Below are positions 2,753 through 54,688 of a stretch of DNA of 64,000 nt, one piece after another. Position 1 is the stretch's first letter, and every line of letters begins with the position of its first letter. The notes beneath the pieces were generated by a model that worked only from the letters and a program-made list of their open reading frames with translations, had not been told where the DNA came from and did not search any database. The position numbers and the translations under genes were made by a program. The stretch is taken from positions 17,360,001 to 17,424,000 of the forward strand of contig NC_083237.1 in assembly GCF_032191835.1 (NCBI RefSeq), in the 5' to 3' direction. Source of the DNA: Heteronotia binoei (taxonomy: Eukaryota).

Positions 2753-3206
2753 CTGAGGGCTTTGTTTCACTTTGCTCCATTTATCATTGCAATTCTCCCA
2801 GGATTTGGTAACCTCCAGGTGGGGCTTGAAGATCTCCTGGAATTACAACTGGCCTTCAAAAGACTCCCACATTGCATCGAAGGAAACACCATTTTCTAAT
2901 GCTGCACGCTGTACTTAGAAATGAAGTCTTGTGCCCTTAAGAACATAAAAAAAGCCATGTTGGATCAGGCCAATGGGCCATCTGAATGAACTAGATCTTT
3001 CAAACTTCTAGTATGTCTGAAGCCAATGAAAGGAGGCATACTGCTCCCAGGAATATCAAGCAAAAGATGCCAATGTTTATAAAGGTGAGAAAAAGGGGTG
3101 TAGTTGAAGGCACAAGAGATTTTATTAGTAGTCCTCTTACAAAAGATCTACAAAAGTAGATTTAAAATCTAAAAATTTACAAAAGTAGTCCTCTTACAAA
3201 AGTCCT

Positions 3207-3947: not shown

Positions 3948-4165
3948 TAGGGTTGCCAGGTCTCTGTTGGAAAATACCTGGAGACTTTGGGGGTGGATCC
4001 AGGAGTGGGTGGGCACTGGGGAGGGGCGGGGCCTCACTCAGCAGGAGACAATGCCCGAGTCCACCCTTCAAAGCAGCCACTCTCTCCAGGGGAGCTGATC
4101 TCTGCCAGCTGGAGGTCAGTTGTAAAAGCAGATCTCCAGGCCCCACCTGGAGGCTGGTAACCCTA
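3948..4165. mobile_element. hAT-family MITE (TAGGGTTGCC termini); copy at 44514-44731
   Basis: TAGGGTTGCCA...TGGTAACCCTA with a perfect 8-bp TSD, GCCTCCAA. Truncated relatives lie near 26-100, 390-560, 4320-4600, 5650-5880 and 24395-24700. Confidence 0.88.
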
Positions 4166-5045: not shown

Positions 5046-5550
5046 AGAGGCAGCCCTGGATGCTCAGAGGAACTTGGGGATGTGAAAATGCTATCATATA
5101 TTTAAAATAGTTTCATAAATAGTCATATTTCTGGGCATGCAGGTGTTTGGGCTGGTCCACGGCATACAATTGGCCACTGGCTCTTTCAGTTGATGGGAAA
5201 TGCGGCTCCGTGGCCAACACAGCATGAGTGACACTGATGAAATGCCAGAAACACAAACAAGTTTTAACAGCAGTTTGCTTCCCTTCAGGCCTTGACGTCT
5301 GTTTTCTCTGTTTGGTGGGTTACCCCAGCAGTGCCAGGTGGGAAACGTTCTACCCTAGTGAAACAATCCAGAGCCCATTGTGATGGAAACTCGGAACCTA
5401 GACTGCCTTTTCCGTTGGGTGGATACAGGTTCAACTGTCAACTGACTCTTGGACTAGCATCCATCTGCTGGGAAAATTGAGAGCTCAGTTTATTCAATTC
5501 TCCAGAGCAGCAATCAGTCATTGCCTTATCTGGACTTTGTAGCCCTACAG

Positions 5551-7749
5551 ACAGGGAAATCCTTCTCTTCGATCCAGAGAAACCAGTGGTTGTAATGGTT
5601 GAGAAAATGGTAAGGAAGATTCTGACACTCTTTATCTGTGGGTTGAAAGGCTAAGGGAGAGGGTTGCCAGCCTCCAGTCTGGGCCTGGAGATCTCCTGCT
5701 TTTACAACTGATCTCCAGCAGGCAGAGATCAGCTCCCCTGGAGAAAATGGCTACTTTGAAGGTTGGACTCTTGGGCATTGTGCGATGCTGAAGCCCCTCC
5801 CCTCCCCAAACCCCACCTTCTCCTGGACCCAAAGTCTTCAGGTGTTTTCCAACACAGATCTGGTGAAGTGACTCAACTGTGGAGGAGGGAGGCATGCCCA
5901 GAAATTGCACTGGCATAGGTGAAAGGCCAGAGAGATTTGGCAGCCCAAAGGGACCAAATCCAAAATAGCTCAGCCTTGGGTGGTAAAAAATTCTTATAAA
6001 CCAGTTACAAAATTAAATCTTATCTTATAAACCAATTACATAATTGGAGAGAAGCTATGTTCTACTGATCTGCTGTCTTACTGTGGATCATATTAGATAT
6101 ATCACAACAAATAAATTGTACAGTAAAAGTTAGTAATTTGGTGCCCTTTAAGTGTAATCAGTAGTCTGATTTTATAAAGAATGTTTTTTTAAAAGAAAAA
6201 GGCCACAAATGGCTCTGTCTTTATCTCCATACTTCCAACAGTTCACAAAAGGGCCTTTCTCTTCAAAAAGAGAACCATTTCCCTGAATTTGCATTGATGA
6301 TTCTGATGATCTCTTCCAAGAAACATCATCTTCTGGGGAGGCATGAGGAGGACAGGGAGTTGTGAGGGGAGAAGTGCAGGGGGGGCTCCCTCTCCATTCT
6401 GCCTGGATCCAGCCCACCACCATGGGGCCTTTTGCCTAGCATTTCAATTGCTATTCCTACCAGACGTGGGGAAGAGAATGGGGAGGAATTGTTAGGAGAT
6501 GGTCTCCCAATAGAACCCCTAGTAGCTCCAAGCCAATCAAGGCATCTCACCTGCTGGTGATTCTTTCTACATGCCTGGTAAGCCAGTGGCTGTCTTAACA
6601 TCTGACCTTTCAAGGGTCCTCCTTGAAAAGAAAAGAGAAATGAATGAGCTAAAACAAACAAACGAAAGGAAATGTGCCTTCTTGTGATCAAGAAGCCAAC
6701 TGTGATGCTTCTGAGAAGGGTCTTAAACCCCGCCTTCTCTGGACCCTTTGGCCTTGCAGCTGCAGCATCAGGAGGTGCGAGAGGAAGAGGTGGCCCTTCA
6801 GGGGAGCCTTCAGGAGGTGCTAGAAGGTGCCACAGAAGAGTCTTTGGTTTGTGACACCCAGGAGGAGTTTTGTCCTGTGCCGAGCGAGAGCCCGGAAGGA
6901 AACCTGGAGTGCTCAGCAAATGAGGTGAGTCTGGAAAGGAAAGACAGAAGCTGGACAGTTAATCAGAGGCACAGGTGGGCTTAGGGGAAATGTGCCTTCT
7001 TGTGATCAAGAAGCCAACTGTGATGCTTCTGAGAAGGGTCTTAAACCCAGTCTTCTCTGGACCCTTTGGTCTTGCAGCTGCAGCATCAGGAGGTGCGAGA
7101 GGAAGAGGTGGCCCTTCAGGGGAGCCTTCAGGATGTACTAGAAGGTGCCACAGAAGAGTCTTTGGTTTGTGACACCCAGGAGGAGCTTTGTCCTCTGCCG
7201 AGCGAGAGCCCGGAAGGAAACCTGGAGTGCTCAGCAAATGAGGTGAGTCTGGAAAGGAAAGACAGAAGCTGGACAGTTAATCAGAGGCATAGGTTGGCTA
7301 TGGGGCTGGAATAATGAGAGAAGGCGCAGTTAGAGGTCAATGTCCAGAGAGGGAATGTGAGGGCCACCCAGCTGCCAAGAGATTTCCCTGGGAAGCTGGA
7401 TCATGAGTGTCTGTTCCCGTTGTCACCTTGTCTCCTCTGAATGGGAGGAGCTCCCCAGCCCGTGGGCAGAGAAAGCTACTCCCCCTGAGGCCAGAGTGAC
7501 AACTCCTGCCACAGAACCTGGGGCCCGGGGTCACCACTTGGGGGTAAATGGACTAGATGAAAAATAAAGGAGGTGAAATACGCATTCTTGCTTCTTCGTG
7601 GAGAAGCCAGCTGTGATGAGGGTCTTAAATTAAATCAAGAACCAAAAAAGGTAAGAAATAAACGTAGCAGAGGGCCAATAGTTAAAACCTCATATATACT
7701 TGTTATAATAAAAATACACATATTAATTAAAATTATATTAATTAATTAA

Positions 7750-7818
<69 letters not shown>

Positions 7819-10800
7819 CCCATTGAAAGCCTTGTAACAAAATACGAATGACATATACACAATGATGATGATGATAATGATGATATTGGTTTTATATTCC
7901 ACCCTCCACTCCGAATCTCAGAGTCTTAGAGCTGCTCACAATCTTCTTTCCCTTCCTCCCCCACAACAGACACCCTGTGAGGTGGGTGGGGCTGAGAGGG
8001 CTCTCACAGCAGCTGCCCTTTCAAGGACAGAGTCTCAGAGCGTCTCACAATCTCCTTTCCCTTCCTCCCCCACAACAGACACCCTGTGAGGTGGGTGGGG
8101 CTGAGCGGGCTTTCACAACAGCTGCCCTTTCAAGGACAGAGTCTCACAGTGGCCCACAATCTCCTTTCCCTTCGTCCCCCACAACAGACACCCTGTGAGG
8201 TGGGTGGGGCTGAGAGGGCTCTAAAAGCAGCTGCCCTTTCAAGGACAGAGTCTCACAGTGGCTTACAATCTCCTTTCCCTTCCTCCCCCACACAGACACC
8301 CTGTGAGGTGGGTGGGGCTGAGCGGGCTTTCACAGCAGCTGCCCTTTCGAGGACAGAGTCTCACAGTGGCCCACAATCTCCTTTCCCTTCCTCCCCCCCA
8401 ACAGACACCCTGTGAGGTGGGTGGGGCTGAGAGGGCTCTAAAAGCAGCTGCCCTTTCAAGGACAGAGTCTCAGAGCAGCTCACAATCTTTTTTCCCTCAC
8501 AATCTTTTTTTCTCACAATCTTTTTTTGGGATACGAGTTTAATAAAGTTGCAGAGATTTTTCTGTTAGGATTACAAATGGAAAAATTTCCAAAAGAAGAC
8601 AGAACTTTAATCTGGTACTTGCTCTCAGCTGCTAGGACATTGTATGCGCAGTTGTGGAAGCAAGAAAAAATACCAGAGAAATGGGATTGGATTATAAATG
8701 TTATGTCATGGAGTGAAATGGACAAATTAACAAGAATATTAAAAGACTATGACTTAGAAGTTTTTAAGATGGAGTGGAAGAATTTCAGAAGATATGTAGA
8801 AAAAGTGTGGAAAATAAAAGGACATTGGACAATCTTTGATAATGATTAAGTTTTTAAAACAAGAATATAACTTTTGGTTTTTTAATAGTTAAGGGTACCT
8901 TTAATATTTGTGTTTTTTTAAGTAAATAACACTGGTGGGGGTCAAGTAACGGGGGGAGGGGTGGGGGAAAAGTAAGATATGGGGTAGATAAATTTTTCTT
9001 TTTTTAAGTTGTAAGATAAAGATATAGATCTGCTACCATACGTTACCAATAAAAATTGTTTATGCAAAAAAAACCCCACCAAGTTTGAGGTACAAATAGG
9101 CACATATTACAAAGAACTGTTACAAAGAACTAGCAAAGAATATAACAACATGTTGTCAAACGATTTCATAGCCAGAGTCCATTGGTTGTTGTAGAATTTC
9201 TGGGCGGTGTGGCCGTGGTTTTGGAATTTTGAGACATGATGTTTTGCCCGTGACTGTGACTGGCATCCTCAAAGGTGTAACCCAGAAAAAGAAAGCTCCC
9301 ACAAGATAATGACTCAGCCCTACCCTACCTTCCTGAGTAGATACAAATTACCTGCCTACCAACTTCTTCTCAATTTGACGCAGAGAGAACTCCAGTTTTC
9401 GGGGTTACACCTCTGAGGATGCAAAACGTCGGGTCTCATAATGGCAAGACCATGGCCACACAGCCCGGGAAATCTACAACAACCATTATAACAATACTGG
9501 ACCAAAAAAAGGAATTTTCCAAAGAGAGATCAGTAGGCACAAGACAGGAATGTTCAAGAGACCTCTCAGGAATAAATCATGCATCCAGTGCATATGCACG
9601 GGTGGTAAAAGATGTTACTGTTGTCTGTCTTCCAGTTCTGGTCCAGAAAGTAATGCTATATTCCATTATTCAGAGCCAAGACATCGACAGAAGGCAGCAA
9701 GAGGAACAGGAAGAAGAGGAAGCCTCTCAGGATAGTCGAAATGTTGTGGAGGAAGGGGCAGTAGACGACCCTTTGCTTTCTAGTTCCCCAGAGGAGTCTT
9801 CGCCTTCGCCAGATGAACAACACAAAGTACCCTTGGAGGTCATAGTAAATGTGGTAAGTCTTAAGAACATAAGAGAAGCCATATTGGATCAGGCCAAAAG
9901 TCCATCATTCCAACACTCTGTGTCACACAATGGCCAAAAAATCTAGGTGTCATCAGGAGGTCCATCAGTGGGGCCAGGACACCAGAAGCCCTCCCACTGC
10001 TGCATCCCCCCAAGCACCAAGAATACATAGCATCAATGCCCCAGACAGAGAGTTCCAACAAAACGCTGTGGCTAATAGCCACTGATGGACCTCTGCTGTT
10101 TATCCAACCACCTCTTGAAGCTGTCTACGCTTGCAGCTGCCACCACCTCCTGTAGCAGTGAATTCCATGTGTTCATCACCCTTTGGGTGAAATAGGACTT
10201 ATCTTCAAAGGAGAGAGAGAAGCTGGACAGATAAACAGAAAAGCTAGTTTAATAAGGGGTCGGGAGGGGAGTGGGGTGAGAGAAGAATTCAGGCAATAAT
10301 CCTCTCAGTCCTGGAGATCAATAAATGAGAAACTAGAACAAGCAGATGTCTTCTCTGCTCAGACTTGTTGGAGCTCTCCCAGATTATTCCTCAGAACGTG
10401 GGGTCTCTATGGCACCAGAGTTAAATCTTGTGTGTGCAAATCATGGTGCCCTACCACTGAGCTATGGGACCTTCCAGAAACATCTGGAGCTGCTTTATGC
10501 AGAGTCAGTCTCTAGGCCTGCCCAGCTTTAGTATTGCCAACTCTAACTGGCAGCGGCTCTGCAGACCTTCACAATGTCTGCTGTTGCCTGAAATTCTTTA
10601 AATAACCTGAGACCTGCTGCATGGAAGTCTTGGCCTCTGACCATGGAGAAATGGGCCCTGCTTCCTATCAAATGGTTGCTGGGAAACCAGGTCAGCTTAT
10701 GGAGTTGCCTCATCTGGCTCAGCATTTTCCATTGGCTCTCCACCTGCAGGGCCAGCCCTCTCCATTAGGCATCCCTAGGCCACTACCTAGGGTGCCATCC

Positions 10801-13430
10801 AGGGGGGGGGTACTCGGCTGGGTCCTCCCCCCGCCCTCAGCGAGGGAAATGGGTGAGCACGGCACCTGCACCTCAGAGTGCATGTGCTGCCTGGCTACCG
10901 TCACTCAGCCCAGCCACCATCCCTTGTGAAAGCTTCCAGAAGCGATGGCGGACAGGCGGAACGATGGCGGCTGGGAGGCATATGTGCTTTGAAGCGCAGG
11001 CGCTAGGCCACACCGTTGCTGTGGTGCTCACCCTCACTGGGGGCGAGGGAGGAGGGGTGCAGGCTGTGGGGTGAGGGGTGGCAGGGTAGGACCTCGCCTT
11101 GGGTGCCAGACCCCCTGGAGATGGCCCTGATCCCCTCACAAAAAACATTCCTCTGTCACCTGAAGTGTTTTTTTTTGGTTTCAAATGGTGTTTCCCTTCC
11201 AGGTGACCTCTGTCTACAGCCAGGACAGTGATGGGCAGGTGACAGAGAGCCCCCAGACCCCCAGGCCAGAGTCTCCTGACGGTGACTACTTAGCACAAGA
11301 GAGCTGCTACCTCACAGACCGCGAAGACCTCCACCAGGACTCTGGTGCTTCCACGGGCTACTTCCCTTGCTACCTCACCTACAGCAATCTCCCCCCCTAC
11401 CAGTCTGAGAGTGACGATGAACTTCCAGACCCCCCGGCCAGTCCTGAGGCCAGCCTCCAAGTTGAGGGCACTTTGCAGGACAAAGCCAGCGAGAAGGAAG
11501 GAGGAGTGGAAGGCAGCCCCAGAGGGGAAGAGGCCAAGGTGAAGAAGCCCCACTCTGGCAAAGGGTCCCGGCTGCCCAGCCCGCAAGGGGCTTTGGGAAT
11601 GCACAGCGAGGGAGGTGCTAGAGGCAAACTCTAGAAAGTCTGAGGAATGGGGCCTGCTGGGAATACAGGGCCAGTGCAGAGAAGAATGCAAGATGCCTCC
11701 TGGTCACATCACACGGAAGGGTTCCAGTGCCAGACCTCTCAGGGAAGTTCTGGAGCAGGGCACAAAAATGTCGGCCCTCTTTTGTTGCTTGTGCCCAGTT
11801 CCAGAGATAGATTGCTCCTGTATGCAGGAGTTCTAAATAGTTCACTATTCCATGAATTTGTTGAATTCAGGAGGCCAGTTTTTCTGTTGGTACAGCCTCC
11901 CAGCAGAAAGGACCCACGTTGGGTTGCAAATTTAGTGCCTGGCAAAAAACACCTCAGAAAAGACCCAGTTTATGTCAAATGGGGCCAGCCTTTGTTTTTA
12001 TTCCAAGGGATGCTCATTTTGTGTGGGATAGACGAAGTCTGGAAGATGTCAGCTATCATGTAAAAGAGATTCTAGTCCTCATTGTGCAGAAATTTACTTA
12101 TTTATAGGGTTGCCAAGTCCAATTCAAGAAATATATGGGGACTTTGGGGGTGGAGCCAGGAGACCTTGGGGTGGAGCCAGGAGGCATTGGGGGCAGAGCC
12201 AGGAGCAAGGGTGTGACAAGCATAATTGAACTCCAAGGGAGTTCTGGTCATCACATGTAAAGGGACAGCACACCTTTTTAAATGCTTTCCTTCCATAGGA
12301 AATAATGAAAGCTAGGGGCACCTTATTTTGGGGCTCATAGAATTGGACCTCCTGGTCCAATCTTTTTGAAACTTGGGGGGGTATTTTGAGGAGAGGCACT
12401 AGATGCTATTCTGAAAATGTGGTGCCTCTAACACAAAAAACAGCCCCCCCAGAGCCCCCGATATATCCAGATCAATTCTCCATTATACCCTATGAGAATC
12501 GATCTCCACATAGGGAATAATGAAGTGCCTAGCAGACATTTCCCTCCCCCTCCCTGTTTCTGGGGACTCCGAAGTGAGGGACTGGCCTCTTTACTCACGA
12601 GTTGCTGCCAACTTCTTCAAAGTAACACAGACACCCCATCCCAAGAGGAAGCCTTTCTGAGCGGAGACTGAAGCCTCTGGAGGGGGAAAGGCACATGGGG
12701 GCTGTGGGGCTGGGGCTTCCCCCCCCTGCTGGCCAGCTGAGTGGGGGGGGGGAAGGAGCCTAGGAAAGCGGGAGAACCTCCCCCCCGCTGGGACCTGGGG
12801 ATTGGCAAGCCTACTTATTTATTATATTAGGCTTTTATACTAACCTCCCCGCAAGCTTGTTAGAAAACATCCTTAAAGTGGCATAGCTGGTCAGTGTGGA
12901 AGTACAAGGCCACATCTTTTTAGCCTGGGTGAAGGAATATTGTAGAGCTGCAAATTAATGCCTTTACGTAAATGCTGCCTTTGCAGTCCCAGAGTCCATA
13001 GAGTATGAGCATCAAAGTGTGACCTGTAAGGGACAAAGCAATGGGCAAAACCAAAACCGGCCACTGCTGCAGTCAGCACAGCCCCCCCCCCCCTTCAAGC
13101 AGCTGCTTGCTAGAACTCCAGTTCCAAGAATCCCTCCGTTCAGAGCCCTGGCTGTGAGAATGACTTCTCTTCTTCCTGCAGAGTCCGGCAGTGGCCAAGA
13201 CAGGAGAGCCAACCCCGTCGGCTCCCAGCTGCCCGTCCGCCGCACCCACGTCCCGCCGGAGCGTCACCAACTTTTTTCAGTGGGTCCGCAACGTCTTTAG
13301 CCGGTCTTCCCTAAGGAGTCAACAGCGCAGCCCAGCTGCAAGAGGCGAAAGGCAGCGCAAAAATATCGGCACGCGGCTGCGAGGCTGGATCAGGAAGCAC
13401 CGGGGGCGAGTGCACCCCGACAACTGCTGA
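5551..13430 (+). CDS. Candidate multi-exon gene in block X (copy 1) encoding an acidic low-complexity protein with a basic C-terminal tail; product not recognised
   Basis: Stop-free, phase-compatible AG/GT-bounded segments: 5551-5609 (phase 1 to 0, donor gtaagg), 6464-6577 (0 to 0, gtaagc), 6760-6924 and 7078-7242 (0 to 0, gtgagt), 9674-9853 (0 to 0, gtaagt), 11203-11538? (donor weak; frame stays open to TAG at 11634), and 13182-13430 (phase 0 to TGA, ...RGRVHPDNC*). Most acceptors are pyrimidine-rich. The first exon and start codon were not established. Confidence 0.55.
7755..7816. repeat. (TA)31 microsatellite; the paralogue at 48313-48386 is (TA)37
   Basis: Direct reading. Confidence 0.97.
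7920..8490 (-). repeat. Tandem array of a 109-bp SINE-internal segment (5 units plus a partial); copy at 48490-49060
   Basis: Unit starts 7920, 8029, 8138, 8247, 8355 and 8464. The sequence is the reverse complement of the body of the SINE at 15853-16135. Confidence 0.9.
8528..9073 (+). mobile_element. L1-like LINE 3' fragment (ORF2 C-terminus, 3' UTR, poly-A); copy at 49098-49642
   Basis: LLSAARTLYAQLWKQEKIP..WDWI..V..WSEMDKLT...F..EWK.F is typical of squamate L1/Tx1 ORF2 ends; AATAAA and an A-tail follow. Confidence 0.8.
9181..9490. mobile_element. Penelope-like terminal sequence as an inverted pair (minus 9181-9290; plus 9396-9490) with degenerate hammerhead cores
   Basis: ggttgttgtagaatttctgggcggtgtggcc...gcatcctcaaaggtgtaaccc pairs with ggggttacacctctgaggatgc...ggccacacagcccgggaaatctacaacaacc. 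Confidence 0.6.
9861..10195 (-). mobile_element. CR1 LINE 3' fragment; copy at about 50430-50765
   Basis: Same 3' UTR and tail as the element at 753. Confidence 0.85.
12105..12813. mobile_element. hAT-family non-autonomous element (709 bp); copy at 52697-53403
   Basis: TAGGGTTGCCAA...TTGGCAAGCCTA with a perfect 8-bp TSD, CTTATTTA. Confidence 0.9.
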
Positions 13431-13528
13431 GGCGCAGACAGGTCACGAGCGCTCAAACTTTGTGAACAAGGACTTCCTGCTGCTTTTAAACTGTTTACTC
13501 ATCATGGTTACTGCTAGTATTAGATATA

Positions 13529-15723
13529 ATAAGGCTTGCTGAAGCATTAGTTATAGTAAGGCTTGCTGAAGCATTAGTTATAGTAAGGCTTGCTGAAGCA
13601 TTAGTTATAGTAAGGCTTGCTGAAGCATTAGTTATGGTAAGGCTTGCTGAAGCATTAGTTATAGTAAGGCTTGCTGAAGCATTAGTTATAGTAAGGCTTG
13701 CTGAAGCATTAGTTATGGTAAGGCTTCCTGAAGCATTAGTTATAGTAAGGCTTGCTGAAGCATTAGTTATGGTAAGGCTTGCTGAAGCATTAGTTATAGT
13801 AAGGCTTGCTGAAGCATTAGTTATGGTAAGGCTTGCTGAAGCATTAGTTATGGTAAGGCTTGCTGAAGCATTAGTTATAGTAAGGCTTGCTGAAGCATTA
13901 GTTATGGTAAGGCTTCCTGAAGCATTAGTTATAGTAAGGCTTGCTGAAGCATTAGTTATAGTAAGGCTTGCTGAAGCATTAGTTATGGTAAGGCTTGCTG
14001 AAGCATTAGTTATAGTAAGGCTTGCTGAAGCATTAGTTATGGTAAGGCTTCCTGAAGCATTAGTTATAGTAAGGCTTGCTGAAGCATTAGTTATAGTAAG
14101 GCTTGCTGAAGCATTAGTTATGGTAAGGCTTGCTGAAGCATTAGTTATAGTAAGGCTTGCTGAAGCATTAGTTATGGTAAGGCTTGCTGAAGCATTAGTT
14201 ATGGTAAGGCTTGCTGAAGCATTAGTTATAGTAAGGCTTGCTGAAGCATTAGTTATGGTAAGGCTTGCTGAAGCATTAGTTATAGTAAGGCTTGCTGAAG
14301 CATTAGTTATAGTAAGGCTTGCTGAAGCATTAGTTATAGTAAGGCTTGCTGAAGCATTAGTTATGGTAAGGCTTGCTGAAGCATTAGTTATAGTAAGGCT
14401 TGCTGAAGCATTAGTTATGGTAAGGCTTGCTGAAGCATTAGTTATAGTAAGGCTTGCTGAAGCATTAGATATAATAAGGCTTGCTGAAGCATTAGTTATG
14501 GTAAGGCTTGCTGAAGCATTAGTTATGGTAAGGCTTGCTGAAGCATTAGTTATGGTAAGGCTTGCTGAAGCATTAGTTATGGTAAGGCTTGCTGAAGCAT
14601 TAGTTATAGTAAGGCTTGCTGAAGCATTAGTTATGGTAAGGCTTGCTGAAGCATTAGTTATGGTAAGGCTTGCTGAAGCATTAGTTATGGTAAGGCTTGC
14701 TGAAGCATTAGTTATGGTAAGGCTTGCTGAAGCATTAGTTATGGTAAGGCTTGCTGAAGCATTAGTTATGGTAAGGCTTGCTGAAGCATTAGTTATAGTA
14801 AGGCTTGCTGAAGCATTAGTTATGGTAAGGCTTGCTGAAGCATTAGTTATAGTAAGGCTTGCTGAAGCATTAGTTATAGTAAGGCTTGCTGAAGCATTAG
14901 TTATGGTAAGGCTTTCTGAAGTATTAGTTATGGTAAGGCTTGCTGAAGCATTAGTTATAGTAAGGCTTGCTGAAGCATTAGTTATGGTAAGGCTTGCTGA
15001 AGCATTAGTTATAGTAAGGCTTGCTGAAGCATTAGTTATGGTAAGGCTTTCTGAAGTATTAGTTATGGTAAGGCTTGCTGAAGCATTCGATATAATAAGG
15101 CTTGCTGAAGCATTAGTTATAGTAAGGCTTGGTGAAGTATTAGTTATGGAAAGGCTTGCTGAAGCATTAGTTATGGTAAGGCTTGCTGGAGCATTAATTA
15201 TAGTAAGGCTTGCTGAAGTAATAGTTATGGTAAGGCTTGCTGAAGCATTAGTTATGGTAAGGCTTGCTGGAGCATTAGTTATAGTAAGGCTTGCTGAAGT
15301 AATAGTTATGGTAAGGCTTGCTGAAGCATTAGTTATAGTAAGGCTTGCTGAAGCATTAGTTATGGTAAGGCTTGCTGAAGCATTAGTTATAGTAAGGCTT
15401 GCTGAAGCATTAGTTATGGTAAGGCTTGCTGAAGCATTAGTTATAGTAAGGCTTGCTGAAGTAATAGTTATGGAAAGGCTTGCTGAAGCATTAGTTATGG
15501 TAAGGCTTGCTGGAGCATTAGTTATAGTAAGGCTTGCTGAAGTAATAGTTATGGTAAGGCTTGCTGAAGCATTAGATATAATAAGGCTTGCTGAAGCATT
15601 AGATATAATAAGGCTTGCTGAAGCATTAGTTATAGTAAGGCTTGCTGAAGCATTAGTTATGGTAAGGCTTGCTGAAGCATTAGTTATAGTAAGGCTTGCT
15701 GAAGTATTAGTTATGGTAAGGCT
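13529..15723 (+). repeat. 27-bp minisatellite, 81 full units (consensus GTAAGGCTTGCTGAAGCATTAGTTATR)
   Basis: First unit start 13529, last (partial) unit start 15716; 2187/27 = 81. The frame is kept throughout, so net indels are absent. Confidence 0.97.
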
Positions 15724-43300: not shown

Positions 43301-46116
43301 GAAACCGCATGCTTGACACTGAGGGCTTTGTTTCACTTTGCTCCATTTATCATTGCAATTCTCCCAGGATTTGGTAACCTCCAGGTGGGGCTTGAAGATC
43401 TCCTGGAATTACAACTGGCCTTCAAAAGACTCCCACATTGCATCGAAGGAAACACCATTTTCTAATGCTGCACGCTGTACTTAGAAATGAAGTCTTGTGC
43501 CCTTAAGAACATAAAAAAAGCCATGTTGGATCAGGCCAATGGGCCATCTGAATGAACTAGATCTTTCAAACTTCTAGTATGTCTGAAGCCAATGAAAGGA
43601 GGCATACTGCTCCCAGGAATATCAAGCAAAAGATGCCAATGTTTATAAAGGTGAGAAAAAGGGGTGTGGTTGAAGGCACAAGAGATTTTATTAGTAGTCC
43701 TCTTACAAAAGATCTACAAAAGTAGATTTAAAATCTAAAAATTTACAAAAGTAGTCCTCTTACAAAAGTCCTCTACAAAAGATCTTTACGATCCACACTG
43801 TAAGCCCTACCCACTGCAGATTGCACAATTAATCTAGAGTAGCCACGTGTCAAAAATGCATTCTGCGACTTTTTACAGTCCCTCATATAATCACTGTGTT
43901 TAGTGGAGTTCCTTTCTACGTGTAAAAATTGGCTGTATGGCAAACTCTCACACATGCATAAGAAGTACATAGATAAGCTCTTTGGGATCCTGAATAAATA
44001 TGAATATAATGATGTTGATCCACACTGTACACAGCTCCATTACTTTTACGGGATCCGGCAATGCAGATATGGTTTCTTTTTTAGGCTGGTGTATTTACCA
44101 CACCTGTAATTATACTCTGGCCATGCACCTATTTAGGAACCCTACAGATCGGAGTTCCGTTTTATATTTTCGATCCTTCCATCCACGACATTTGCTGGCC
44201 CCGGGTCATCCAGTGACGTTCCATGCTGTGATTCAAAACTGGGTCTTCCAGATATTGTCCAATGCTTATACCACACTAGCTCTCAAGGCTTTGAGATACC
44301 TTGGGCTTTGATATCATGGAAGAGGAAGAAAAGTTCTCTCTAGCCCCTTCTCAGTGTTGCATGTTTTGTAAACCTTTATTTCTCACCTTGCAGTCAGTTG
44401 GGATTACCATGTTCTTTGCCTTTTTGAGGTGGGAGCAAAGAGGACTGCATCCAGTAATACAACTGGAACAACATCAAAGTTTAACATAATGGCCTTAGGC
44501 AATGGGCCTCCAATAGGGTTGCCAGGTCTCTGTTGGAAAATACCTGGAGACTTTGGGGGTGGATCCAGGAGTGGGTGGGCACTGGGGAGGGGAGGGGCCT
44601 CACTCAGCAGGAGACAATGCCCGAGTCCACCCTTCAAAGCAGCCACTCTCTCCAGGGGAGCTGATCTCTGCCAGCTGGAGGTCAGTTGTAAAAGCAGATC
44701 TCCAGGCCCCACCTGGAGGCTGGTAACCCTAGCCTCCAATTACCTTTTTGCTTGCTTATCTTCAGAGGCTGAAGTTCTCTTGAGGCACCTTCTTGGCCCA
44801 TTTTGCCCTTGAACCAAGATGGCTTTTCTCTCCCTTTTCTCCTCAGAACTCCCCCTGTCTTCCCTCATGCCTCTCCTTTTCCCTTCAGGCCTGGAGATTT
44901 GAGAGCAGCACAGGGCCAGAGATTCCACCCTCCAAAAGCATCCGAATTCTCCAGGGCTACTGATCTCTGTAGTCTGGAGATGAGTTGTAATCCCAAGAGA
45001 TCCCCAGACCCCACTTGGAGGATGGCACCCCTAAATCCTGGGGACTCTTCTAGAGGGTGGAGTCTGTGACATTATGCCCCGCTGAGGTCCCTCGCCTCCC
45101 CAAACCCGGCCTCCTGCAGTCACCACTCCCAAAACTCCAGCCATTTTCTCATCTGGACTTTATAGCCCTACAGACAGGGAAGTCCTCCAGAGACACCAAG
45201 GCCACAGACGTTTCTTGTGTTGAAAACATTTTATTGCATTTAGAAAGGGAAAGGGGAAAGAGAAATGGGAATAAAAAAATTTTCGCTGTTCCATTTCTGA
45301 ATGATACAAAAATAGATAACACATGAAAAGCAAAGTATTTCTCTATATAAGTTAAGTTGCAACAAATTACTGTCTTTTGATCTGTTGATATAATCTCATT
45401 TTAACAATCAAAATTCTACTAATTCATAGTTTCATACTACTAACATGGCCTGTAAAGGACAAAGTTATACCAGAGTGTCTAACCAAGTATAGAAGGGATT
45501 CCAAAGGATCTGTTTCTTGTACTGATCTCTCCTTCGGGGGAGAGGAAAGTTTGTCCAACTCAGCTGTTTCTAATACTTTTCCAATTGGATCTTGTTTCTA
45601 ATGCTCTTGTGAGAGGCAGCCCTGGATGCTCAGAGGAACTTGGGGATGTGAAAATGCTATCATATATTTAAAATAGTTCCATAAATAGTCATATTTCTGG
45701 GCATGCAGGTGTTTGGGCTGGTCCACGGCATACAATTGGCCACTGGCTCTTTCAGTTGATGGGAAATGCGGCTCCGTGGTCAACACAGCATGAGTGACAC
45801 TGATGAAATGCCAGAAACACAAACAAGTTTTAACAGCAGTTTGCTTCCCTTCAGGCCTTGACGTCTGTTTTCTCTGTTTGGTGGGTTACCCCAGCAGTGC
45901 CAGGTGGGAAACGTTCTACCCTAGTGAAACAATCCAGAGCCCATTGTGATGCAATCTCGGAACCTAGACTGCCTTTTCCGTTGGGTGGATACAGGTTCAA
46001 CTGTCAACTGACTCTTGGACTAGCATCCATCTGCTGGGAAAATTGAGAGCTCAGTTTATTCAATTCTCCAGAGCAGCAATCAGTCATTGCCTAATCTGGA
46101 CTTTGTAGCCCTACAG

Positions 46117-48307
46117 ACAGGGAAATCCTTCTCTTCGATCCAGAGAAACCAGTGGTTGTAATGGTTGAGAAAATGGTAAGGAAGATTCTGACACTCTTTA
46201 TCTGGGGGTTGAAAGGCTAAGGGAGAGGGTTGCCAGCCTCCAGTTTGGGCCTGGAGATCTCCTGCTTTTACAACTGATCTCCAGCAGGCAGAGATCAGCT
46301 CCCCTGGAGAAAATGGCTACTTTGAAGGTTGGACTGTTGGGCATTGTGCGATGCTGAAGCCCCTCCCCTCCCCAAACCCCACCTTCTCCTGGACCCAAAG
46401 TCTTCAGGTGCTTTCCAACACAGATCTGGTGAAGTGACTCAACTGTGGAGGAGGGAGGCATGCCCAGAAATTGCACTGGCATAGGTGAAAGGCCAGAGAG
46501 ATTTGGCAGCCCAAAGGGACCAAATCCAAAATAGCTCAGCCTTGGGTGGTAAAAAATTCTTATAAACCAGTTACAAAATTAAATCTTATCTTATAAGCCA
46601 ATTACATAATTGGAGAGAAGCTATGTTCTACTGATCTGCTGTCTTACTGTGGATCATATTAGATATATCACAACAAATAAATTGTACAGTAAAAGTTAGT
46701 AATTTGGTGCCCTTTAAGTGTAATCAGTAGTCTGATTTTATAAAGAATGTTTTTTTAAAAGAAAAAGGCCACAAATGGCTCTGTCTTTATCTCCATACTT
46801 CCAACAGTTCACAAAAGGGCCTTTCTCTTCAAAAAGAGAACCATTTCCCTGAATTTGCATTGATGATTCTGATGATCTCTTCCAAGAAACATCATCTTCT
46901 GGGGAGGCATGAGGAGGACAGGGAGTTGTGAGGGGAGAAGTGCAGGGGGGGCTCCCTCTCCATTCTGCCTGGATCCAGCCCACCACCATGGGGCCTTTTG
47001 CCTAGCATTTCAATTGCTATTCCTACCAGACGTGGGGAAGAGAATGGGGAGGAATTGTTAGGAGATGGTCTCCCAATAGAACCCCTAGTAGCTCCAAGCC
47101 AATCAAGGCATCTCACCTGCTGGTGATTCTTTCTACATGCCTGGTAAGCCAGTGGCTGTCTTAACATCTGACCTTTCAAGGGTCCTCCTTGAAAAGAAAA
47201 GAGAAATGAATGAGCTAAAACAAACAAACGAAAGGAAATGTGCCTTCTTGTGATCAAGAAGCCAACTGTGATGCTTCTGAGAAGGGTCTTAAACCCCGCC
47301 TTCTCTGGACCCTTTGGCCTTGCAGCTGCAGCATCAGGAGGTGCAAGAGGAAGAGATGGCCCTTCAGGGGAGCCTTCAGGAGGTGCTAGAAGGTGCCACA
47401 GAAGAGTCTTTGGTTTGTGACACCCAGGAGGAGTTTTGTCCTGTGCCGAGCGAGAGCCCGGAAGGAAACCTGGAGTGCTCAGCAAATGAGGTGAGTCTGG
47501 AAAGGAAAGACAGAAGCTGGACAGTTAATCAGAGGCACAGGTGGGCTTAGGGGAAATGTGCCTTCTTGTGATCAAGAAGCCAACTGTGATGCTTCTGAGA
47601 AGGGTCTTAAACCCAGTCTTCTCTGGACCCTTTGGTCTTGCAGCTGCAGCATCAGGAGGTGCGAGAGGAAGAGGTGGCCCTTCAGGGGAGCCTTCAGGAT
47701 GTACTAGAAGGTGCCACAGAAGAGTCTTTGGTTTGTGACACCCAGGAGGAGCTTTGTCCTCTGCCGAGCGAGAGCCCGGAAGGAAACCTGGAGTGCTCAG
47801 CAAATGAGGTGAGTCTGGAAAGGAAAGACAGAAGCTGGACAGTTAATCAGAGGCACAGGTTGGCTATGGGGCTGGAGTAATGAGAGAAGGCGCAGTTAGA
47901 GGTCAATGTCCAGAGAGGGAATGTGAGGGCCACCCAGCTGCCAAGAGATTTCCCTGGGAAGCTGGATCATGAGTGTCTGTTCCCGTTGTCACCTTGTCTC
48001 CTCTGAATGGGAGGAGCTCCCCAGCCCGTGGGCAGAGAAAGCTACTCCCCCTGAGGCCAGAGTGACAACTCCTGCCACAGAACCTGGGGCCCGGGGTCAC
48101 CACTTGGGGGTAAATGGACTAGATGAAAAATAAAGGAGGTGAAATACGCATTCTTGCTTCTTCGTGGAGAAGCCAGCTGTGATGAGGGTCTTAAATTAAA
48201 TCAAGAACCAAAAAAGGTAAGAAATAAACGTAGCAGAGGGCCAATTGTTAAAACCTCATATATACTTGTTATAATAAAAATACACATATTAATTAAAATT
48301 ATATTAA

Positions 48308-48388
<81 letters not shown>

Positions 48389-51300
48389 CCCATTGAAAGC
48401 CTTGTAACAAAATACGAATGACATATACACAATGATGATGATGATAATGATGATATTGGATTTATATTCCACCCTCCACTCCGAATCTCAGAGTCTTAGA
48501 GCTGCTCACAATCTCCTTTCCCTTCCTCCCCCACAACAGACACCCTGTGAGGTGGGTGGGGCTGAGAGGGCTCTCACAGCAGCTGCCCTTTCAAGGACAG
48601 AGTCTCAGAGCGTCTCACAATCTCCTTTCCCTTCCTCCCCCACAACAGACACCCTGTGAAGTGGGTGGGGCTGAGAGGGCTCTAAAAGCAGCTGCCCTTT
48701 CAAGAACAGAGTCTCACAGAGGCCCACAATCTCCTTTCCCTTCGTCCCCCACAACAGACACCCTGTGAGGTGGGTGGGGCTGAGAGGGCTCTAAAAGCAG
48801 CTGCCCTTTCAAGGACAGAGTCTCACAGTGGCTTACAATCTCCTTTCCCTTCCTCCCCCACACAGACACCCTGTGAGGTGGGTGGGGCTGAGCGGGCTTT
48901 CACAGCAGCTGCCCTTTCAAGGACAGAGTCTCACAGTGGCCCACAATCTCCTTTCCCTTCCTCCCCCCCAACAGACACCCTGTGAGGTGGGTGGGGCTGA
49001 GAGGGCTCTAAAAGCAGCTGCCCTTTCAAGGACAGAGTCTCAGAGCAGCTCACAATCTTTTTTCCCTCACAATCTTTTTTTCTCACAATCTTTTTTTGGG
49101 ATACGAGTTTAATAAAGTTGCAGAGATTTTTCTGTTAGGATTACAAATGGAAAAATTTCCAAAAGAAGACAGAACTTTAATCTGGTACTTGCTCTCAGCT
49201 GCTAGGACATTGTATGCGCAGTTGTGGAAGCAAGAAAAAATACCAGAGAAATGGGATTGGATTATAAATGTTATGTCATGGAGTGAAATGGACAAATTAA
49301 CAAGAATATTAAAAGACTATGACTTAGAAGTTTTTAAGATGGAGTGGAAGAATTTCAGAAGATATGTAGAAAAAGTGTGGAAAATAAAAGGACATTGGAC
49401 AATCTTTGATAATGATTAAGTTTTTAAAACAAGAATATAACTTTTGGTTTTTTAATAGTTAAGGGTACCTTTAATATTTGTGTTTTTTTAAGTAAATAAC
49501 ACTGGTGGGGGTCAAGTAACGGGGGGAGGGGTGGGGGAAAAGTAAGATATGGGGTAGATAAATTTTTCTTTTTTTAAGTTGTAAGATAAAGATATAGATT
49601 TGCTACCATATGTTACCAATAAAAATTGTTTATGCAAAAAAACCCCCACCAAGTTTGAGGTACAAATAGGCACATATTACAAAGAACTCTTACAAAGAAT
49701 TAGCAAAGAATATAACAACATGTTGTCAAAGGATTTCATAGCCAGAGTCCATTGGTTGTGGTAGAATTTCTGGGCGGTGTGGCCGTGGTTTTGGAATTTT
49801 GAGACATGATGTTTTGCCCGTGACTGTGACTGGCATCCTCAAAGGTGTAACGCAGAAAAAGAAAGCTCCCACAAGATAATGACTCAGCCCTACCCTACCT
49901 TCCTGAGTAGATACAAATTACCTGCCTACCAACTTCTTCTCAATTTGACGCAGAGAGAACTCCAGTTTTCGGGGTTACACCTCTGAGGATGCAAAACGTC
50001 GGGTCTCATCATGGCAAGACCATGGCCACACAGCCCGGGAAATCTACAACAACCATTATAACAATACTGGACCAAAAAAGGAATTTTCCAAAGAGAGATC
50101 AGTAGGCACAAGACAGGAATGTTCAAGAGACCTCTCAGGAATAAATCATGCATCCAGTGCATATGCACGGGTGGTAAAAGATGTTACTGTTGTCTGTCTT
50201 CCAGTTCTGGTCCAGAAAGTAATGCTATATTCCATTATTCAGAGCCAAGACATCGACAGAAGGCAGCAAGAGGAACAGGAAGAAGAGGAAGCCTCTCAGG
50301 ATAGTCGAAATGTTGCGGAGGAAGGGGCTGTAGACGAACCTTTGCTTTCTAGTTCCCCAGAGGAGTCTTCGCCTTCGCCAGATGAACAACACAAAGTACC
50401 CTTGGAGGTCATAGTAAATGTGGTAAGTCTTAAGAACATAAGAGAAGCCATATTGGATCAGGCCAAAAGTCCATCATTCCAACACTCTGTGTCACACAAT
50501 GGCCAAAAAATCTAGGTGTCATCAGGAGGTCCATTAGTGGGGCCAGGACACCAGAAGCCCTCCCACTGCTGCATCCCCCCAAGCACCAAGAATACATAGC
50601 ATCAATGCCCCAGACAGAAAGTTCCAACAAAACGCTGTGGCTAATAGCCACTGATGGACCTCTGCTGTTTATCCAACCAACTCTTGAAGCTGTCTACGCT
50701 TGCAGCTGCCACCACCTCCTGTAGCAGTGAATTCCATGTGTTCATCACCCTTTGGGTGAAATAGGACTTATCTTCAAAGGAGAGAGAGAAGCTGGACAGA
50801 TAAAGAGAAAAGCTAGTTGAATAAGGGGTCGGGGGGGGGAGTGGGGTGAGAGAAGAATTCAGGCAATAATCCTCTCAGTCCTGGAGATCAATAAATGAGA
50901 AACTAGAACAAGCAGATGTCTTCTCTGCTCAGACTTGTTGGAGCTCTCCCAGATTATTCCTCAGAACGTGGGGTCTCTATGGCACCAGAGTTAAATCTTG
51001 TGTGTGCAAAACATGGTGCCCTACCACTGAGCTATGGGACCTTCCAGAAACATCTGGAGCTGCTTTATGCAGAGTCAGTCTCTAGGCCTGCCCAGCTTTA
51101 GTATTGCCAACTCTAACTGGCAGCGGCTCTGCAGACCTTCACAATGTCTGCTGTTGCCTGAAATTCTTTAAATAACCTGAGACCTGCTGCATGGAAGTCT
51201 TGGCCTCTGACCATGGAGAAATGGGCCCTGCTTCCTATCAAATGGTTGCTGGGAAACCAGGTCAGCTTATGGAGTTGCCTCATGCCGACTCAGAGAGTTG

Positions 51301-54028
51301 GTCCATCTGGCTCAGCATTTTCCATTGGCTCTCCACCTGCAGGGCCAGCCCTCTCCATTAGGCATCCCTAGGCCACTACCTAGGGTGCCATCCAGGGGGG
51401 GGTACTGGGCTGGGTCCTCCCCCCGCCCTCAGCGAGGGAAATGGGTGAGCACGGCACCTGCACCTCAGAGTGCATGTGCTGCCTGGCTACCGTCACTCAG
51501 CCCAGCCACCATCCCTTGTGAAAGCTTCCAGAAGCGATGGCGGACAGGCTGAACGATGGCGGCTGGGAGGCATATGTGCTTTGAAGCGCAGGCGCTAGGC
51601 CACACCGTTGCTGTGGTGCTCACCCTCACTGGGGGCGAGGGAGGAGGGGTGCAGGCTGTGGGGTGAGGGGTGGCAGGGTAGGACCTCGCCTTGGGTGCCA
51701 GACCCCCTGGAGATGGCCCTGATCCCCTCACAAAAAACATTCCTCTGTCACCTGAAGTGTTTTTTTTTTGTTTCAAATGGTGTTTCCCTTCCAGGTGACC
51801 TCTGTCTACAGCCAGGACAGTGATGGGCAGGTGACAGAGAGCCCCCAGACCCCCAGGCCAGAGTCTCCTGACGGTGACTACTTAGCACAAGAGAGCTGCT
51901 ACCTCACAGACCGCGAAGACCTCCACCAGGACTCTGGTGCTTCCACGGGCTACTTCCCTTGCTACCTCACCTACAGCAATCTCCCCCCCTACCAGTCTGA
52001 GAGTGACGATGAACTTCCAGACCCCCCGGCCAGTCCTGAGGCCAGCCTCCAAGTTGAGGGCACTTTGCAGGACAAAGCCAGCGAGAAGGAAGGAGGAGTG
52101 GAAGGCAGCCCCAGAGGGGAAGAAGCCAAGGTGAAGAAGCCCCACCCTGGCAAATGGTCCTGGCTGCCCAGCCCGCAAGGGGCTTTGGGAATGCACAGCG
52201 AGGGAGGTGCTAGAGGCAAACTCTAGAAAGTCTGAGGAATGGGGCCTGCTGGCAATACAGGGCCAGTGCAGAGAAGAATGCAAGATGCCTCCTGGTCACA
52301 TCACACGGAAGGGTTCCAGTGCCAGACCTCTCAGGGAAGTTCTGGAGCAGGGCACAAAAATGTCGGCCCTCTTTTGTTGCTTGTGCCCAGTTCCAGAGAT
52401 AGATTGCTCCTGTATGCAGGAGTTCTAAATAGTTCACTATTCCATGAATTTGTTGAATTCAGGAGGCCAGTTTTTCTGTTGGTACAGCCTCCCAGCAGAA
52501 AGGACCCACGTTGGGTTGCAAATTTAGTGCCTGGCAAAAAACACCTCAGAAAAGACCCAGTTTATGTCAAATGGGGCCAGCCTTTGTTTTTATTCCAAGG
52601 GATGCTCATTTTGTGTGGGATAGACGAAGTCTGGAAGATGTCAGCTATCATGTAAAAGAGATTCTAGTCCTCATTGTGCAGAAATTTACTTATTTATAGG
52701 GTTGCCAAGTCCAATTCAAGAAATATATGGGGACTTTGGGGGTGGAGCCAGGAGACCTTGGGGTGGAGCCAGGAGGCATTGGGGGCAGAGCCAGGAGCAA
52801 GGGTGTGACAAGCATAATTGAACTCCAAGGGCGTTCTGGTCATCACATGTAAAGGGACAGCACACCTTTTTAAATGCTTTCCTTCCATAGGAAATAATGA
52901 AAGCTAGGGGCACCTTATTTTGGGGCTCATAGAATTGGACCTCCTGGTCCAATCGTTTTGAAACTTGGGGGGTATTTTGAGGAGAGGCACTAGATGCTAT
53001 TCTGAAAATGTGGTGCCTCTAACACAAAAAACAGCCCCCCCAGAGCCCCCGATATATCCAGATCAATTCTCCATTATACCCTATGAGAATCGATCTCCAC
53101 ATAGGGAATAATGAAGTGCCTAGCAGACATTTCCCTCCCCCTCCCTGTTTCTGGGGACTCTGAAGTGAGGGACTGGCCTCTTTACTCACGAGTTGCTGCC
53201 AACTTCTTCAAAGTAACACAGACACCCCATCCCAAGAGGAAGCCTTTCTGAGCGGAGACTGAAGCCTCTGGAGGGGGAAAGGCACATGGGGGCTGTGGGG
53301 GTGGGCTTCCCTTCCCCTGCTGGCCAGCTGAGTGGGGGGGGGAAGGAGCCTGGGAAAGCGGGAGAACCTCCCCCCCGCTGGGACCTGGGGATTGGCAAGC
53401 CTACTTATTTATTATATTAGGCTTTTATACTAACCTCCCCGCAAGCTTGTTAGAAAACATCCTTAAAGTGGCATAGCTGGTCAGTGTGGAAGTACAAGGC
53501 CACATCTTTTTAGCCTGGGTGAAGGAATATTGTAGAGCTGCAAATTAATGCCTTTACGTAAATGCTGCCTTTGCAGTCCCAGAGTCCATAGAGTATGAGC
53601 ATCAAAGTGTGACCTGTAAGGGACAAAGCAATGGGCAAAACCAAAACCAAAGCAGGCCACTGCTGCAGTCAGCACAGCCCCCCCCCCCCCCTTCAAGCAG
53701 CTGCTTGCTAGAACTCCAGTTCCAAGAATCCCTCCGTTCAGAGCCCTGGCTGTGAGAATGACTTCTCTTCTTCCTGCAGAGTCCGGCAGTGGCCAAGAGA
53801 GTAGAGCCAACCCCGTCGGCTCCCAGCTGCCCGTCCGACGCCCCCACGTCCCGCCGGAGCATCACCAACTTTTTTCAGTGGGTCCGCAATGTCTTTAGCC
53901 GGTCATCCCTAAGGAGTCAACAGCGCAGCCCAGCTGCAAGAGGCGAAAGGGAGCGCAAAAATATCGGCAAGCGGCTGCGAGGCTGGATCAGGAAGCACCG
54001 GGGGCGAGTGCACCCCGACAACTGCTGA
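46117..54028 (+). CDS. Candidate multi-exon gene in block X (copy 2)
   Basis: The same exons at 46117-46175, 47030-47143, 47326-47490, 47644-47808, 50243-50422, 51795-52130? and 53780-54028. All splice dinucleotides and frames are retained despite point substitutions. Confidence 0.55.
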
Positions 54029-54674: not shown

Positions 54675-54688
54675 GAATCCCACCACTG

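What the first reader, a model, noticed from the sequence alone, without database searches (positions are those of the whole stretch)
5551..13430. Hidden multi-exon gene for an acidic, probably disordered protein, co-amplified with NAT
Seen: seven AG/GT-bounded, stop-free segments chain in compatible phases (1-0, then all 0-0) and would give about 420 aa rich in E/D/S/P, ending in a basic, Trp-containing tail. All splice sites and frames survive in copy 2 (46117-54028). The ORF track shows only fragments because the introns contain stops. I do not recognise the product, so it may be a lineage-specific gene family amplified with, and nested in, the NAT array. The end of the 11203 exon and the start codon are uncertain.
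Basis: partly seen in the sequence, partly recalled or inferred. Interest (0 to 1): 0.7.

Follow-up and report, generated by a model that had tools for sequence, protein, structure and literature searches.

The report
Annotated reptile disordered-protein gene, gecko-amplified
The "hidden" multi-exon gene is real, but it is already annotated in the gecko Heteronotia binoei as uncharacterized LOC132583222; it belongs to an unnamed, fast-evolving family of acidic disordered proteins found in turtles and squamates and multiplied in geckos.

Summary
Six window exons (3013-3084, 6760-6924, 7078-7242, 9674-9853, 11203-11538, 13182-13430) encode RefSeq XP_060110873.1 letter for letter (388 aa, "uncharacterized protein LOC132583222", Heteronotia binoei).

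- **Start exon.** It does match the conserved 5-codon start exon of the homologues.
- **Family.** Homologues occur in other geckos (at least 15 models on one Gekko kuhli contig), other squamates and turtles. In the three non-gecko species checked, the gene lies next to ARMC6. No Pfam family, solved structure or paper was found.
- **Exon structure.** Phase-0 introns and AG/GT sites are shared with Paroedura and Gekko. Exons B, C and D are copies of one ancestral acidic exon.
- **Protein.** It is acidic (pI 4.4) and mostly disordered, with a basic tail of two amphipathic helices containing Trp.

Caveats:
- Copy 2 proves nothing, because the whole 14-kb block is 98.7% identical.
- The two copies show no sign of constraint (10 N : 5 S).
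- Both copies have lost the ancestral exon-E donor (GT to GG).
- Contigs from three RNA libraries cross the splice sites unspliced.

Function is unknown. The earlier scan notes s1-322593 and s1-321144 already described the rearrangement of the block that carries this gene.

The parts
3013..3084 (+). First coding exon of the RefSeq model (24 codons, MSEANERR...MPMFIK), donor GT at 3085
   Evidence: Equals P0001 residues 1-24. No DNA match in the stretch upstream of the Paroedura and Gekko genes, and no homologue starts this way.
5595..5609 (+).
   Evidence: It matches the 5-codon start exons MAEEM (Paroedura), MAEKM (Gekko) and MAGKL/MAGKM (Hemicordylus, turtles), with the same phase-0 intron. 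DNA match 5594-5625 to L004 at 87.5%. It is not part of the RefSeq protein.
6760..6924 (+). Acidic exon B (55 codons, phase 0-0)
   Evidence: Equals P0001 residues 25-79. 46% identical to the ancestral acidic exon of Hemicordylus.
7078..7242 (+). Acidic exon C, tandem duplicate of B (55 codons)
   Evidence: Equals P0001 residues 80-134. 95% identical to B.
9674..9853 (+). Acidic exon D (60 codons); an alternative in-frame acceptor lies at 9647
   Evidence: Equals P0001 residues 135-194. Its end, PLEVIVNV, is shared with Paroedura and Gekko (PLEVIVKV).
11203..11538 (+). Exon E (112 codons) with the family's central motif STGYFPCY; RefSeq donor AAG|GTGAAG
   Evidence: Equals P0001 residues 195-306. 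phmmer found 27 relatives. Motif columns G, P, C and T are invariant in alignment A1.
11539..11612 (+). Ancestral extension of exon E (to ...MHSE) and the lost ancestral donor: GG at 11611-11612 where Paroedura and Gekko have GT
   Evidence: donor dinucleotides. Both window copies read GG. An RNA-library contig has T at 11612 (table 3).
13182..13430 (+). Last exon F (82 codons plus stop): basic tail with two amphipathic helices containing Trp
   Evidence: Equals P0001 residues 307-388. Helices 332-346 and 368-379 in the AlphaFold model. Tail pI 12.0 and hydrophobic moments 0.69 and 0.55. The tail is conserved through to turtles.
43579..43650 (+). Copy 2: counterpart of the RefSeq first exon
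46161..46175 (+). Copy 2: start exon MVEKM
47326..47490 (+). Copy 2: exon B (2 replacement differences)
47644..47808 (+). Copy 2: exon C (identical)
50243..50422 (+). Copy 2: exon D (2 replacement differences, 1 silent)
51795..52130 (+). Copy 2: exon E (1 silent difference); the ancestral donor is also GG
53780..54028 (+). Copy 2: exon F (6 replacement differences, 3 silent)

Best explanation
Window 3013-13430 (+) is the protein-coding gene LOC132583222 of the gecko Heteronotia binoei. A second intact copy lies at 43579-54028.

Shown:
- The gene belongs to an unnamed gene family of turtles and squamates. In the three non-gecko species checked, the gene lies tail-to-tail with ARMC6.
- The gecko genes examined (Heteronotia, Paroedura, Gekko) have a shortened form: a 5-codon start exon, one to three copies of an acidic phase-0 exon, an exon carrying the motif S-T-G-Y-F-P-C-Y, and a basic tail exon.
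- This form has multiplied in Gekko kuhli and, in Heteronotia, together with NAT genes.
- The product is acidic and mostly disordered, and has no hydrophobic stretch long enough for a signal peptide or membrane span.

Inferred:
- It works as a soluble intracellular adaptor. The central aromatic/proline motif would bind a partner.
- The two C-terminal basic amphipathic helices with Trp would dock it to an acidic surface such as a membrane, nucleic acid or a calmodulin-like protein.
- The acidic exons would act as a spacer or intramolecular mask whose length changes by exon duplication.
For: - **Identity.** phmmer of exon E found P0001, which is XP_060110873.1. Its gene range matches window 3013-13430. 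All six exon translations are identical to it.
- **Family.** 27 relatives were found with E up to 1e-3, all unnamed, from geckos, Phrynosoma, Hemicordylus, Thamnophis, Rhineura, Lacerta, Phrynocephalus and turtles.
- **Conserved islands.** The central motif and the tail ending in RVHP are conserved.
- **Synteny.** The gene is flanked by SUGP2 and ARMC6 in Rhineura, lies beside ARMC6 in Mauremys, and lies between a mitochondrial-carrier gene and ARMC6 in Hemicordylus.
- **Exon structure.** Paroedura and Gekko have the same exon order, with AG/GT sites and phase 0 throughout. The boundary between the acidic exon and the exon-E counterpart falls at the homologous protein position in Mauremys.
- **Exon duplication.** B, C and D align to one ancestral acidic exon.
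- **Long-term constraint.** dN/dS between gecko genera is 0.36-0.46.
- **Disorder and helices.** AlphaFold gives mean pLDDT 57.7 and pTM 0.27, with helices at residues 332-346 and 368-379. The Atlas model of the Rhineura orthologue has pLDDT 0.40.
- **Charge and hydrophobicity.** pI is 4.42, charge is -56 in the body and +14 in the tail, and the highest 19-residue hydropathy is 0.53.
- **Start exon.** The start exon at 5595 matches homologues.
Against: - No spliced contig was seen. Contigs from the RNA libraries run unspliced across 9647, 9853, 11203, 11538 and 13182, and exons are no deeper than introns. These could be DNA or pre-mRNA. The only hints of splicing are a contig whose fit starts at 11202 after 14 unmatched letters, and a contig that ends exactly at 11538.
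- The young copies show no constraint: 10 N: 5 S between the two copies and 12 N: 4 S among contig variants. Neither departs from the neutral expectation of 0.775.
- Both copies have lost the ancestral exon-E donor. The RefSeq donor at 11538 removes 24 ancestral residues, including the counterpart of the conserved S-L-P-P-S-P stretch.
- Only one Heteronotia protein is on record in its 90% cluster.
- dS is close to saturation and the codon alignments were guided by protein alignment, so the dN/dS values are rough.
- The mechanism rests on sequence features alone.
Confidence: 0.8

Rival explanations
1. The two copies in the window are young, redundant duplicates that are no longer maintained. 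They look intact only because the duplication is recent, and any working member of the family lies elsewhere in the genome.
For: - The whole block is 98.7% identical, and exons are no better kept than introns.
- N:S ratios are neutral.
- The ancestral exon-E donor is GG in both copies, while a contig from another copy or allele keeps GT.
- Only unspliced contigs were seen.
- Copy 2 has no near-identical protein on record.
Against: - All exons are open and every other splice site is intact in both copies.
- An in-frame donor with a good consensus at 11538 rescues the tail.
- RefSeq calls copy 1 protein-coding.
- With 15 differences, the test has very little power.
Confidence: 0.35
2. The true transcript of the window copies starts at the conserved exon at 5595 (MVEKM, product about 369 aa). 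The RefSeq first exon at 3013-3084 would then be an alternative or spurious upstream exon.
For: - Homologues from turtles to geckos start with a 5-codon exon M-[AV]-[EG]-[EK]-[ML], followed by a phase-0 intron.
- DNA of the exon at 5595 is conserved in Gekko.
- Nothing matches 3013-3084 in the sequence upstream of the Paroedura and Gekko genes.
Against: RefSeq chose 3013-3084, possibly from reads I could not see. No RNA data were laid on 2500-8529. Both starts may be in use.
Confidence: 0.55
3. There is no gene. The chain is a chance series of stop-free segments between AG and GT in repeat-rich DNA.
For: One AG/GT-bounded open segment (7573-7650) is indeed unsupported. Parts of the region are repeats.
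Against: The same exons, phases and motifs recur in species that diverged long ago, with E-values down to 1e-27 for exon E alone.
Confidence: 0.02

Closest known systems
RefSeq XP_060110873.1, uncharacterized protein LOC132583222 (Heteronotia binoei)
   Same: It is identical to the six window exons, and its gene range equals window 3013-13430.
   Different: It uses an upstream first exon in place of the conserved exon at 5595. It has no name, domain or function attached.
Uncharacterized ARMC6-neighbour genes of other reptiles (e.g. LOC128344390 Hemicordylus, LOC133372791 Rhineura, LOC120391816 Mauremys, LOC106544799 Thamnophis)
   Same: They share the start exon, an acidic exon, the central STGYFPCYRTY motif and a basic tail ending in RVHP.
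   Different: They are 400-530 aa. They carry an extra N-terminal exon (FPExxIGDSED) and a middle region about 150 aa longer. The three located so far lie beside ARMC6. The gecko genes examined lack those parts and are multiplied. The one gecko gene whose neighbours were seen (Paroedura P0005) lies away from ARMC6.
Secretory calcium-binding phosphoprotein (SCPP) genes
   Same: By analogy only: acidic, disordered, fast-evolving proteins with runs of phase-0 exons that duplicate easily, encoded in tandem arrays (established knowledge).
   Different: The N-terminal stretch is not hydrophobic enough for a signal peptide. The ancestral locus differs, and Pfam gives no match. This gene is not a member.
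GAGE/PAGE-type amplified acidic protein genes of primates
   Same: By analogy only: small acidic disordered proteins encoded by recently amplified tandem units (established knowledge).
   Different: There is no sequence match to any Pfam family, including theirs. The taxa and gene structure differ, and this protein has a basic helical tail.

Membership tests
Unnamed reptile family of ARMC6-neighbour disordered proteins | Central motif S-T-G-Y-[FY]-P-C-[YF]-x-T | tested here: met
   The window has STGYFPCYLT in exon E. G, P, C and T are invariant in alignment A1.
Unnamed reptile family of ARMC6-neighbour disordered proteins | Basic C-terminal tail: a W-containing helix (xxWVxxxFRR), then R-L-x-x-W-I and a final R-V-H-P | tested here: met
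   Exon F reads FFQWVRNVFSR...RLRGWIRKHRGRVHPDNC. W, F, R and P are invariant in A1.
Unnamed reptile family of ARMC6-neighbour disordered proteins | 5-codon start exon followed by a phase-0 intron, and phase-0 introns flanking the acidic exon | tested here: met
   Start exons are MVEKM at 5595-5609 against MAEEM, MAEKM and MAGKL in relatives. Exon maps of Paroedura and Gekko, with partial maps of Mauremys, Hemicordylus and Rhineura, agree. The RefSeq model itself skips this exon.
Unnamed reptile family of ARMC6-neighbour disordered proteins | Position next to ARMC6 | tested here: not met
   The window copies lie among NAT genes. This marks them as a relocated gecko subfamily, as does the Paroedura gene, which lies between an Ig gene and a GPCR gene.
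SCPP genes | N-terminal signal peptide | tested here: not met
   The highest 19-residue hydropathy in P0001 is 0.53, and neither candidate N-terminus is hydrophobic.
Any Pfam-A family | Score above the curated gathering threshold | tested here: not met
   Four exon translations and eight full-length family members were scanned, and nothing reached threshold.
Expressed, spliced gene (window copies) | RNA reads joined at the predicted junctions | tested here: inconclusive
   Contigs from three RNA libraries are unspliced across five sites. There are two indirect hints, at 11202 and at 11538. Only 8530-13480 could be laid.

The most novel reading that the evidence does not exclude
This undescribed protein family, so far found only in turtles and squamates, has a function of its own, carried by the STGYFPCY motif and the basic Trp-helix tail. 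Its shortened form was multiplied in geckos under selection, with at least 15 models in Gekko kuhli and repeated copies tied to NAT in Heteronotia. The fast-changing tail exon (9 differences in 249 bases between the two copies, P = 0.006) would then be a target of diversifying selection, not of decay.
Probability: 0.12. Interest if true: 0.55.

Novelty: already known. Interest (0 to 1): 0.3.

Why it matters
It also recovered a conserved start exon that the RefSeq model omits.

Biologically, the finding gives an anatomy and a history to a family that databases list only as "uncharacterized":
- it originated beside ARMC6 in reptiles;
- the gecko genes examined lack two regions present in the other reptiles;
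- it grew by phase-0 exon duplication;
- it was amplified in tandem and then carried along with a NAT array.

None of this is a new kind of system, and the function remains open.

Tried and rejected
- **Pfam.** Scans of the exon translations and of eight family members gave nothing above threshold.
- **Word-index protein searches.** The search with exon E alone gave nothing, which is an effect of the tool's length limit. A profile search and a search restricted to the motif region found only turtles and squamates. No bird, crocodilian, mammal or amphibian appeared. This is absence from the protein collection, not from genomes.
- **Solved structures.** The only match was AUGMIN subunit 2 at E = 0.04, treated as chance.
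- **ESM Atlas.** Scores were 0.83 or lower, which is chance level, and the hits were other disordered vertebrate proteins.
- **Literature.** A search for six LOC identifiers returned no paper.
- **Copy 2 as evidence of constraint.** Rejected, because the whole block is 98.7% identical.
- **Segment 7573-7650 as an exon.** Rejected. It lies in a third, partial copy of the B/C repeat unit and has no counterpart in any relative.
- **SCPP membership.** Rejected, because the N-terminus lacks the hydrophobic stretch of a signal peptide.
- **Joined model.** I did not build or search a joined spliced peptide from the window. Exons were searched one by one by reference. Whole-protein analyses used the database protein P0001 that a search returned.
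Full report
**What is in the window.** The window is vertebrate DNA with four arylamine N-acetyltransferase (NAT) reading frames. It holds a 14.1-kb direct duplication: 1-14076 matches 40567-54674 at 98.7% identity. Earlier notes of this scan name the organism as the gecko Heteronotia binoei. My own searches agree.

**Checking the observation.** Reading 5400-13600 and translating the candidate segments confirmed stop-free segments bounded by AG and GT, in phase 0:

| Segment | Coordinates | Note |
|---|---|---|
| B | 6760-6924 | |
| C | 7078-7242 | near-identical tandem copy of B |
| D | ends at 9853 | in-frame acceptors at 9647 and 9674 |
| E | starts at 11203 | |
| F | 13182-13430 | |

A short exon ends at 5609 and carries an ATG at 5595 (MVEKM). 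Pfam found nothing in the exon translations.

**Identity.** An exhaustive phmmer search with exon E alone, given by reference, found 27 proteins with E up to 1e-3.
- The best hit, P0001 (388 aa), is RefSeq XP_060110873.1, "uncharacterized protein LOC132583222 [Heteronotia binoei]".
- Its gene spans 10,418 bases on CM063339.1, with NAT genes on both sides.
- Its residues equal, exon by exon, the translations of 3013-3084, 6760-6924, 7078-7242, 9674-9853, 11203-11538 and 13182-13427.

The gene is hidden only from a bacterial-style ORF list.

**The family.** The other hits are all unnamed proteins:
- at least 15 models on one 163-Mb contig of Gekko kuhli;
- several models in Paroedura picta and one in Sphaerodactylus;
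- models in Phrynosoma, Phrynocephalus, Lacerta, Hemicordylus, Thamnophis and Rhineura;
- models in the turtles Pelodiscus, Carettochelys, Mauremys, Chelydra, Lepidochelys and Eretmochelys.

An alignment shows three conserved islands:
- an acidic region;
- a central motif, SASTGYFPCYRTYxEFPRYQPP;
- a basic tail, SRLSxxSxVSWVxKIFRR...SRLRxWIxxxRxRVHP.

A profile search and a search confined to the motif region found no bird, crocodilian, mammal or amphibian protein. Pfam, solved structures, the ESM Atlas and a literature search gave no name.

**Ancestral locus.**
- In Rhineura the gene lies between SUGP2 and ARMC6.
- In Mauremys it lies 2 kb from ARMC6, tail to tail.
- In Hemicordylus it lies between a mitochondrial-carrier gene and ARMC6.
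- The Paroedura gene P0005 lies between an Ig-domain gene and a GPCR gene.
- The Gekko gene P0006 has an upstream neighbour whose DNA matches this gene's exons.
- The Heteronotia copies lie among NAT genes.

This fits the earlier notes that a unit of a gecko gene array was pasted into the NAT cluster and copied with it. I tested that claim only in part.

**Conservation of exon structure.** Mapping P0005 and P0006 onto their loci gave the same plan: a 5-codon start exon (MAEEM, MAEKM), acidic exon(s) ending ...LEVIVKV, an E-type exon and a tail exon. All have AG/GT sites and phase 0. In Mauremys, Hemicordylus and Rhineura the acidic exon and the following boundary fall at the homologous protein positions.

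Two further points follow.
- **Start exon.** The RefSeq first exon at 3013-3084 matches nothing in relatives.
- **Exon duplication.** Exons B, C and D all align to the single acidic exon of non-gecko species. The protein therefore grew by duplication of a phase-0 exon: D against B is old, and B against C is recent (95% identical).

**The uncertain end of exon E.** Paroedura and Gekko splice after the counterpart of ...MHSE, with a GT donor. Both window copies read GG there, at 11611-11612. RefSeq uses an upstream in-frame donor at 11538, which drops 24 ancestral residues. One contig from an RNA library carries T at 11612, so another copy or allele keeps the old donor.

**Constraint.** Between gecko genera, dN/dS is 0.36-0.46 with dS near 1. 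This is rough, but it indicates a fast-evolving gene that is still constrained.

Between the two window copies there are 15 exon differences, 10 replacement and 5 silent. Exons are 1.23% divergent, against 1.37% for the rest of the region. Variants in the RNA-library contigs give 12 replacement to 4 silent. Neither ratio departs from the neutral expectation of 0.775. The young copies therefore show no detectable constraint, and the test has little power. Exon F alone has 9 differences where 3.2 are expected (P = 0.006).

**RNA.** Only three RNA runs from one study hold the stretch, and they are kept as contigs. I laid them on 8530-13480, which is under the 6,000-letter limit and starts after a tandem repeat.
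- Low-depth contigs cover exons and introns alike.
- They run unspliced across 9647, 9853, 11203, 11538 and 13182.
- No predicted junction is among the joints listed.

Two hints of splicing exist. One contig fits from 11202 onward after 14 unmatched letters. Another ends exactly at 11538. This neither shows nor excludes splicing, and DNA carry-over or pre-mRNA would look the same.

**The protein.** P0001 has pI 4.42 and is 40% E+D+S+P. Net charge is -56 over residues 1-306 and +14 in the 82-residue tail. There is no hydrophobic stretch.

AlphaFold2, run with 18 family sequences, gives mean pLDDT 57.7 and pTM 0.27. It predicts helices in the acidic exons and two tail helices, at residues 332-346 and 368-379, with block-mean pLDDT of about 67-82. 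These tail helices are amphipathic. "Acidic, probably disordered, basic Trp tail" is correct.

**How it may work (inference).** I take it to be a soluble intracellular adaptor.
- The conserved aromatic/proline motif would act as a short binding site.
- The basic amphipathic Trp helices would act as a docking element for an acidic surface, such as a membrane, nucleic acid or a calmodulin-like partner.
- The acidic exons would act as a spacer or mask of variable length.

I rate the mechanism at about 0.2. I rate the reality of the gene and its family history at about 0.9, and the present function of the two window copies at about 0.5-0.6.

Exons were searched one by one by reference, and whole-protein work used the database protein that a search returned.
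- The window has no N stretch.

**Verdict.** The gene is already annotated but uncharacterized, and the family is undescribed but of an ordinary kind.

Noticed in passing
window 13182-13430 vs 53780-54028: The tail exon differs at 9 of 249 sites between the two copies (6 replacement, 3 silent), where 3.2 are expected from the block average (Poisson P = 0.006). Most changes are transversions. This could be gene conversion from other copies or diversifying selection.
   Followed up: partly
window 11611-11612 (and 52203-52204): The donor that Paroedura and Gekko use for the E-type exon reads GG in both window copies. An RNA-library contig shows T at 11612, so another copy or allele keeps GT.
   Followed up: partly
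window 13490-15760 and 54090-54710: A 27-bp minisatellite starts about 60 bases after the stop codon. It is 2.27 kb long in copy 1 and 0.62 kb in copy 2. It gives long spurious ORFs on both strands.
   Followed up: no
window 16286-17333: This NAT copy is split over two reading frames, so it is probably a pseudogene. The copies at 23070-23882, 31506-32318 and 55240-56187 are open.
   Followed up: no
window 7740-8520: Intron 3 holds an (AT)n run and about five tandem units of roughly 109 bases. The units also match DNA near the Paroedura and Gekko genes.
   Followed up: no
window 8526-8849, 9858-10189, 12016-12680: Intronic pieces of repeats carry RNA-contig depths of thousands to 100,000: a retrotransposon-like ORF fragment and SINE/MITE-like elements. 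This depth comes from copies elsewhere and says nothing about this gene.
   Followed up: no
window 43579-54028: Copy 2 has all exons open, but no near-identical protein is on record. The 90% cluster of P0001 has a single member.
   Followed up: partly
L004 (Gekko kuhli CM122939.1): Several Gekko kuhli models of 485-823 aa match exon E in 5-7 separate stretches. They look like gene models fused across neighbouring array units. All of them carry the label UNVERIFIED_CONTAM in the source record.
   Followed up: no
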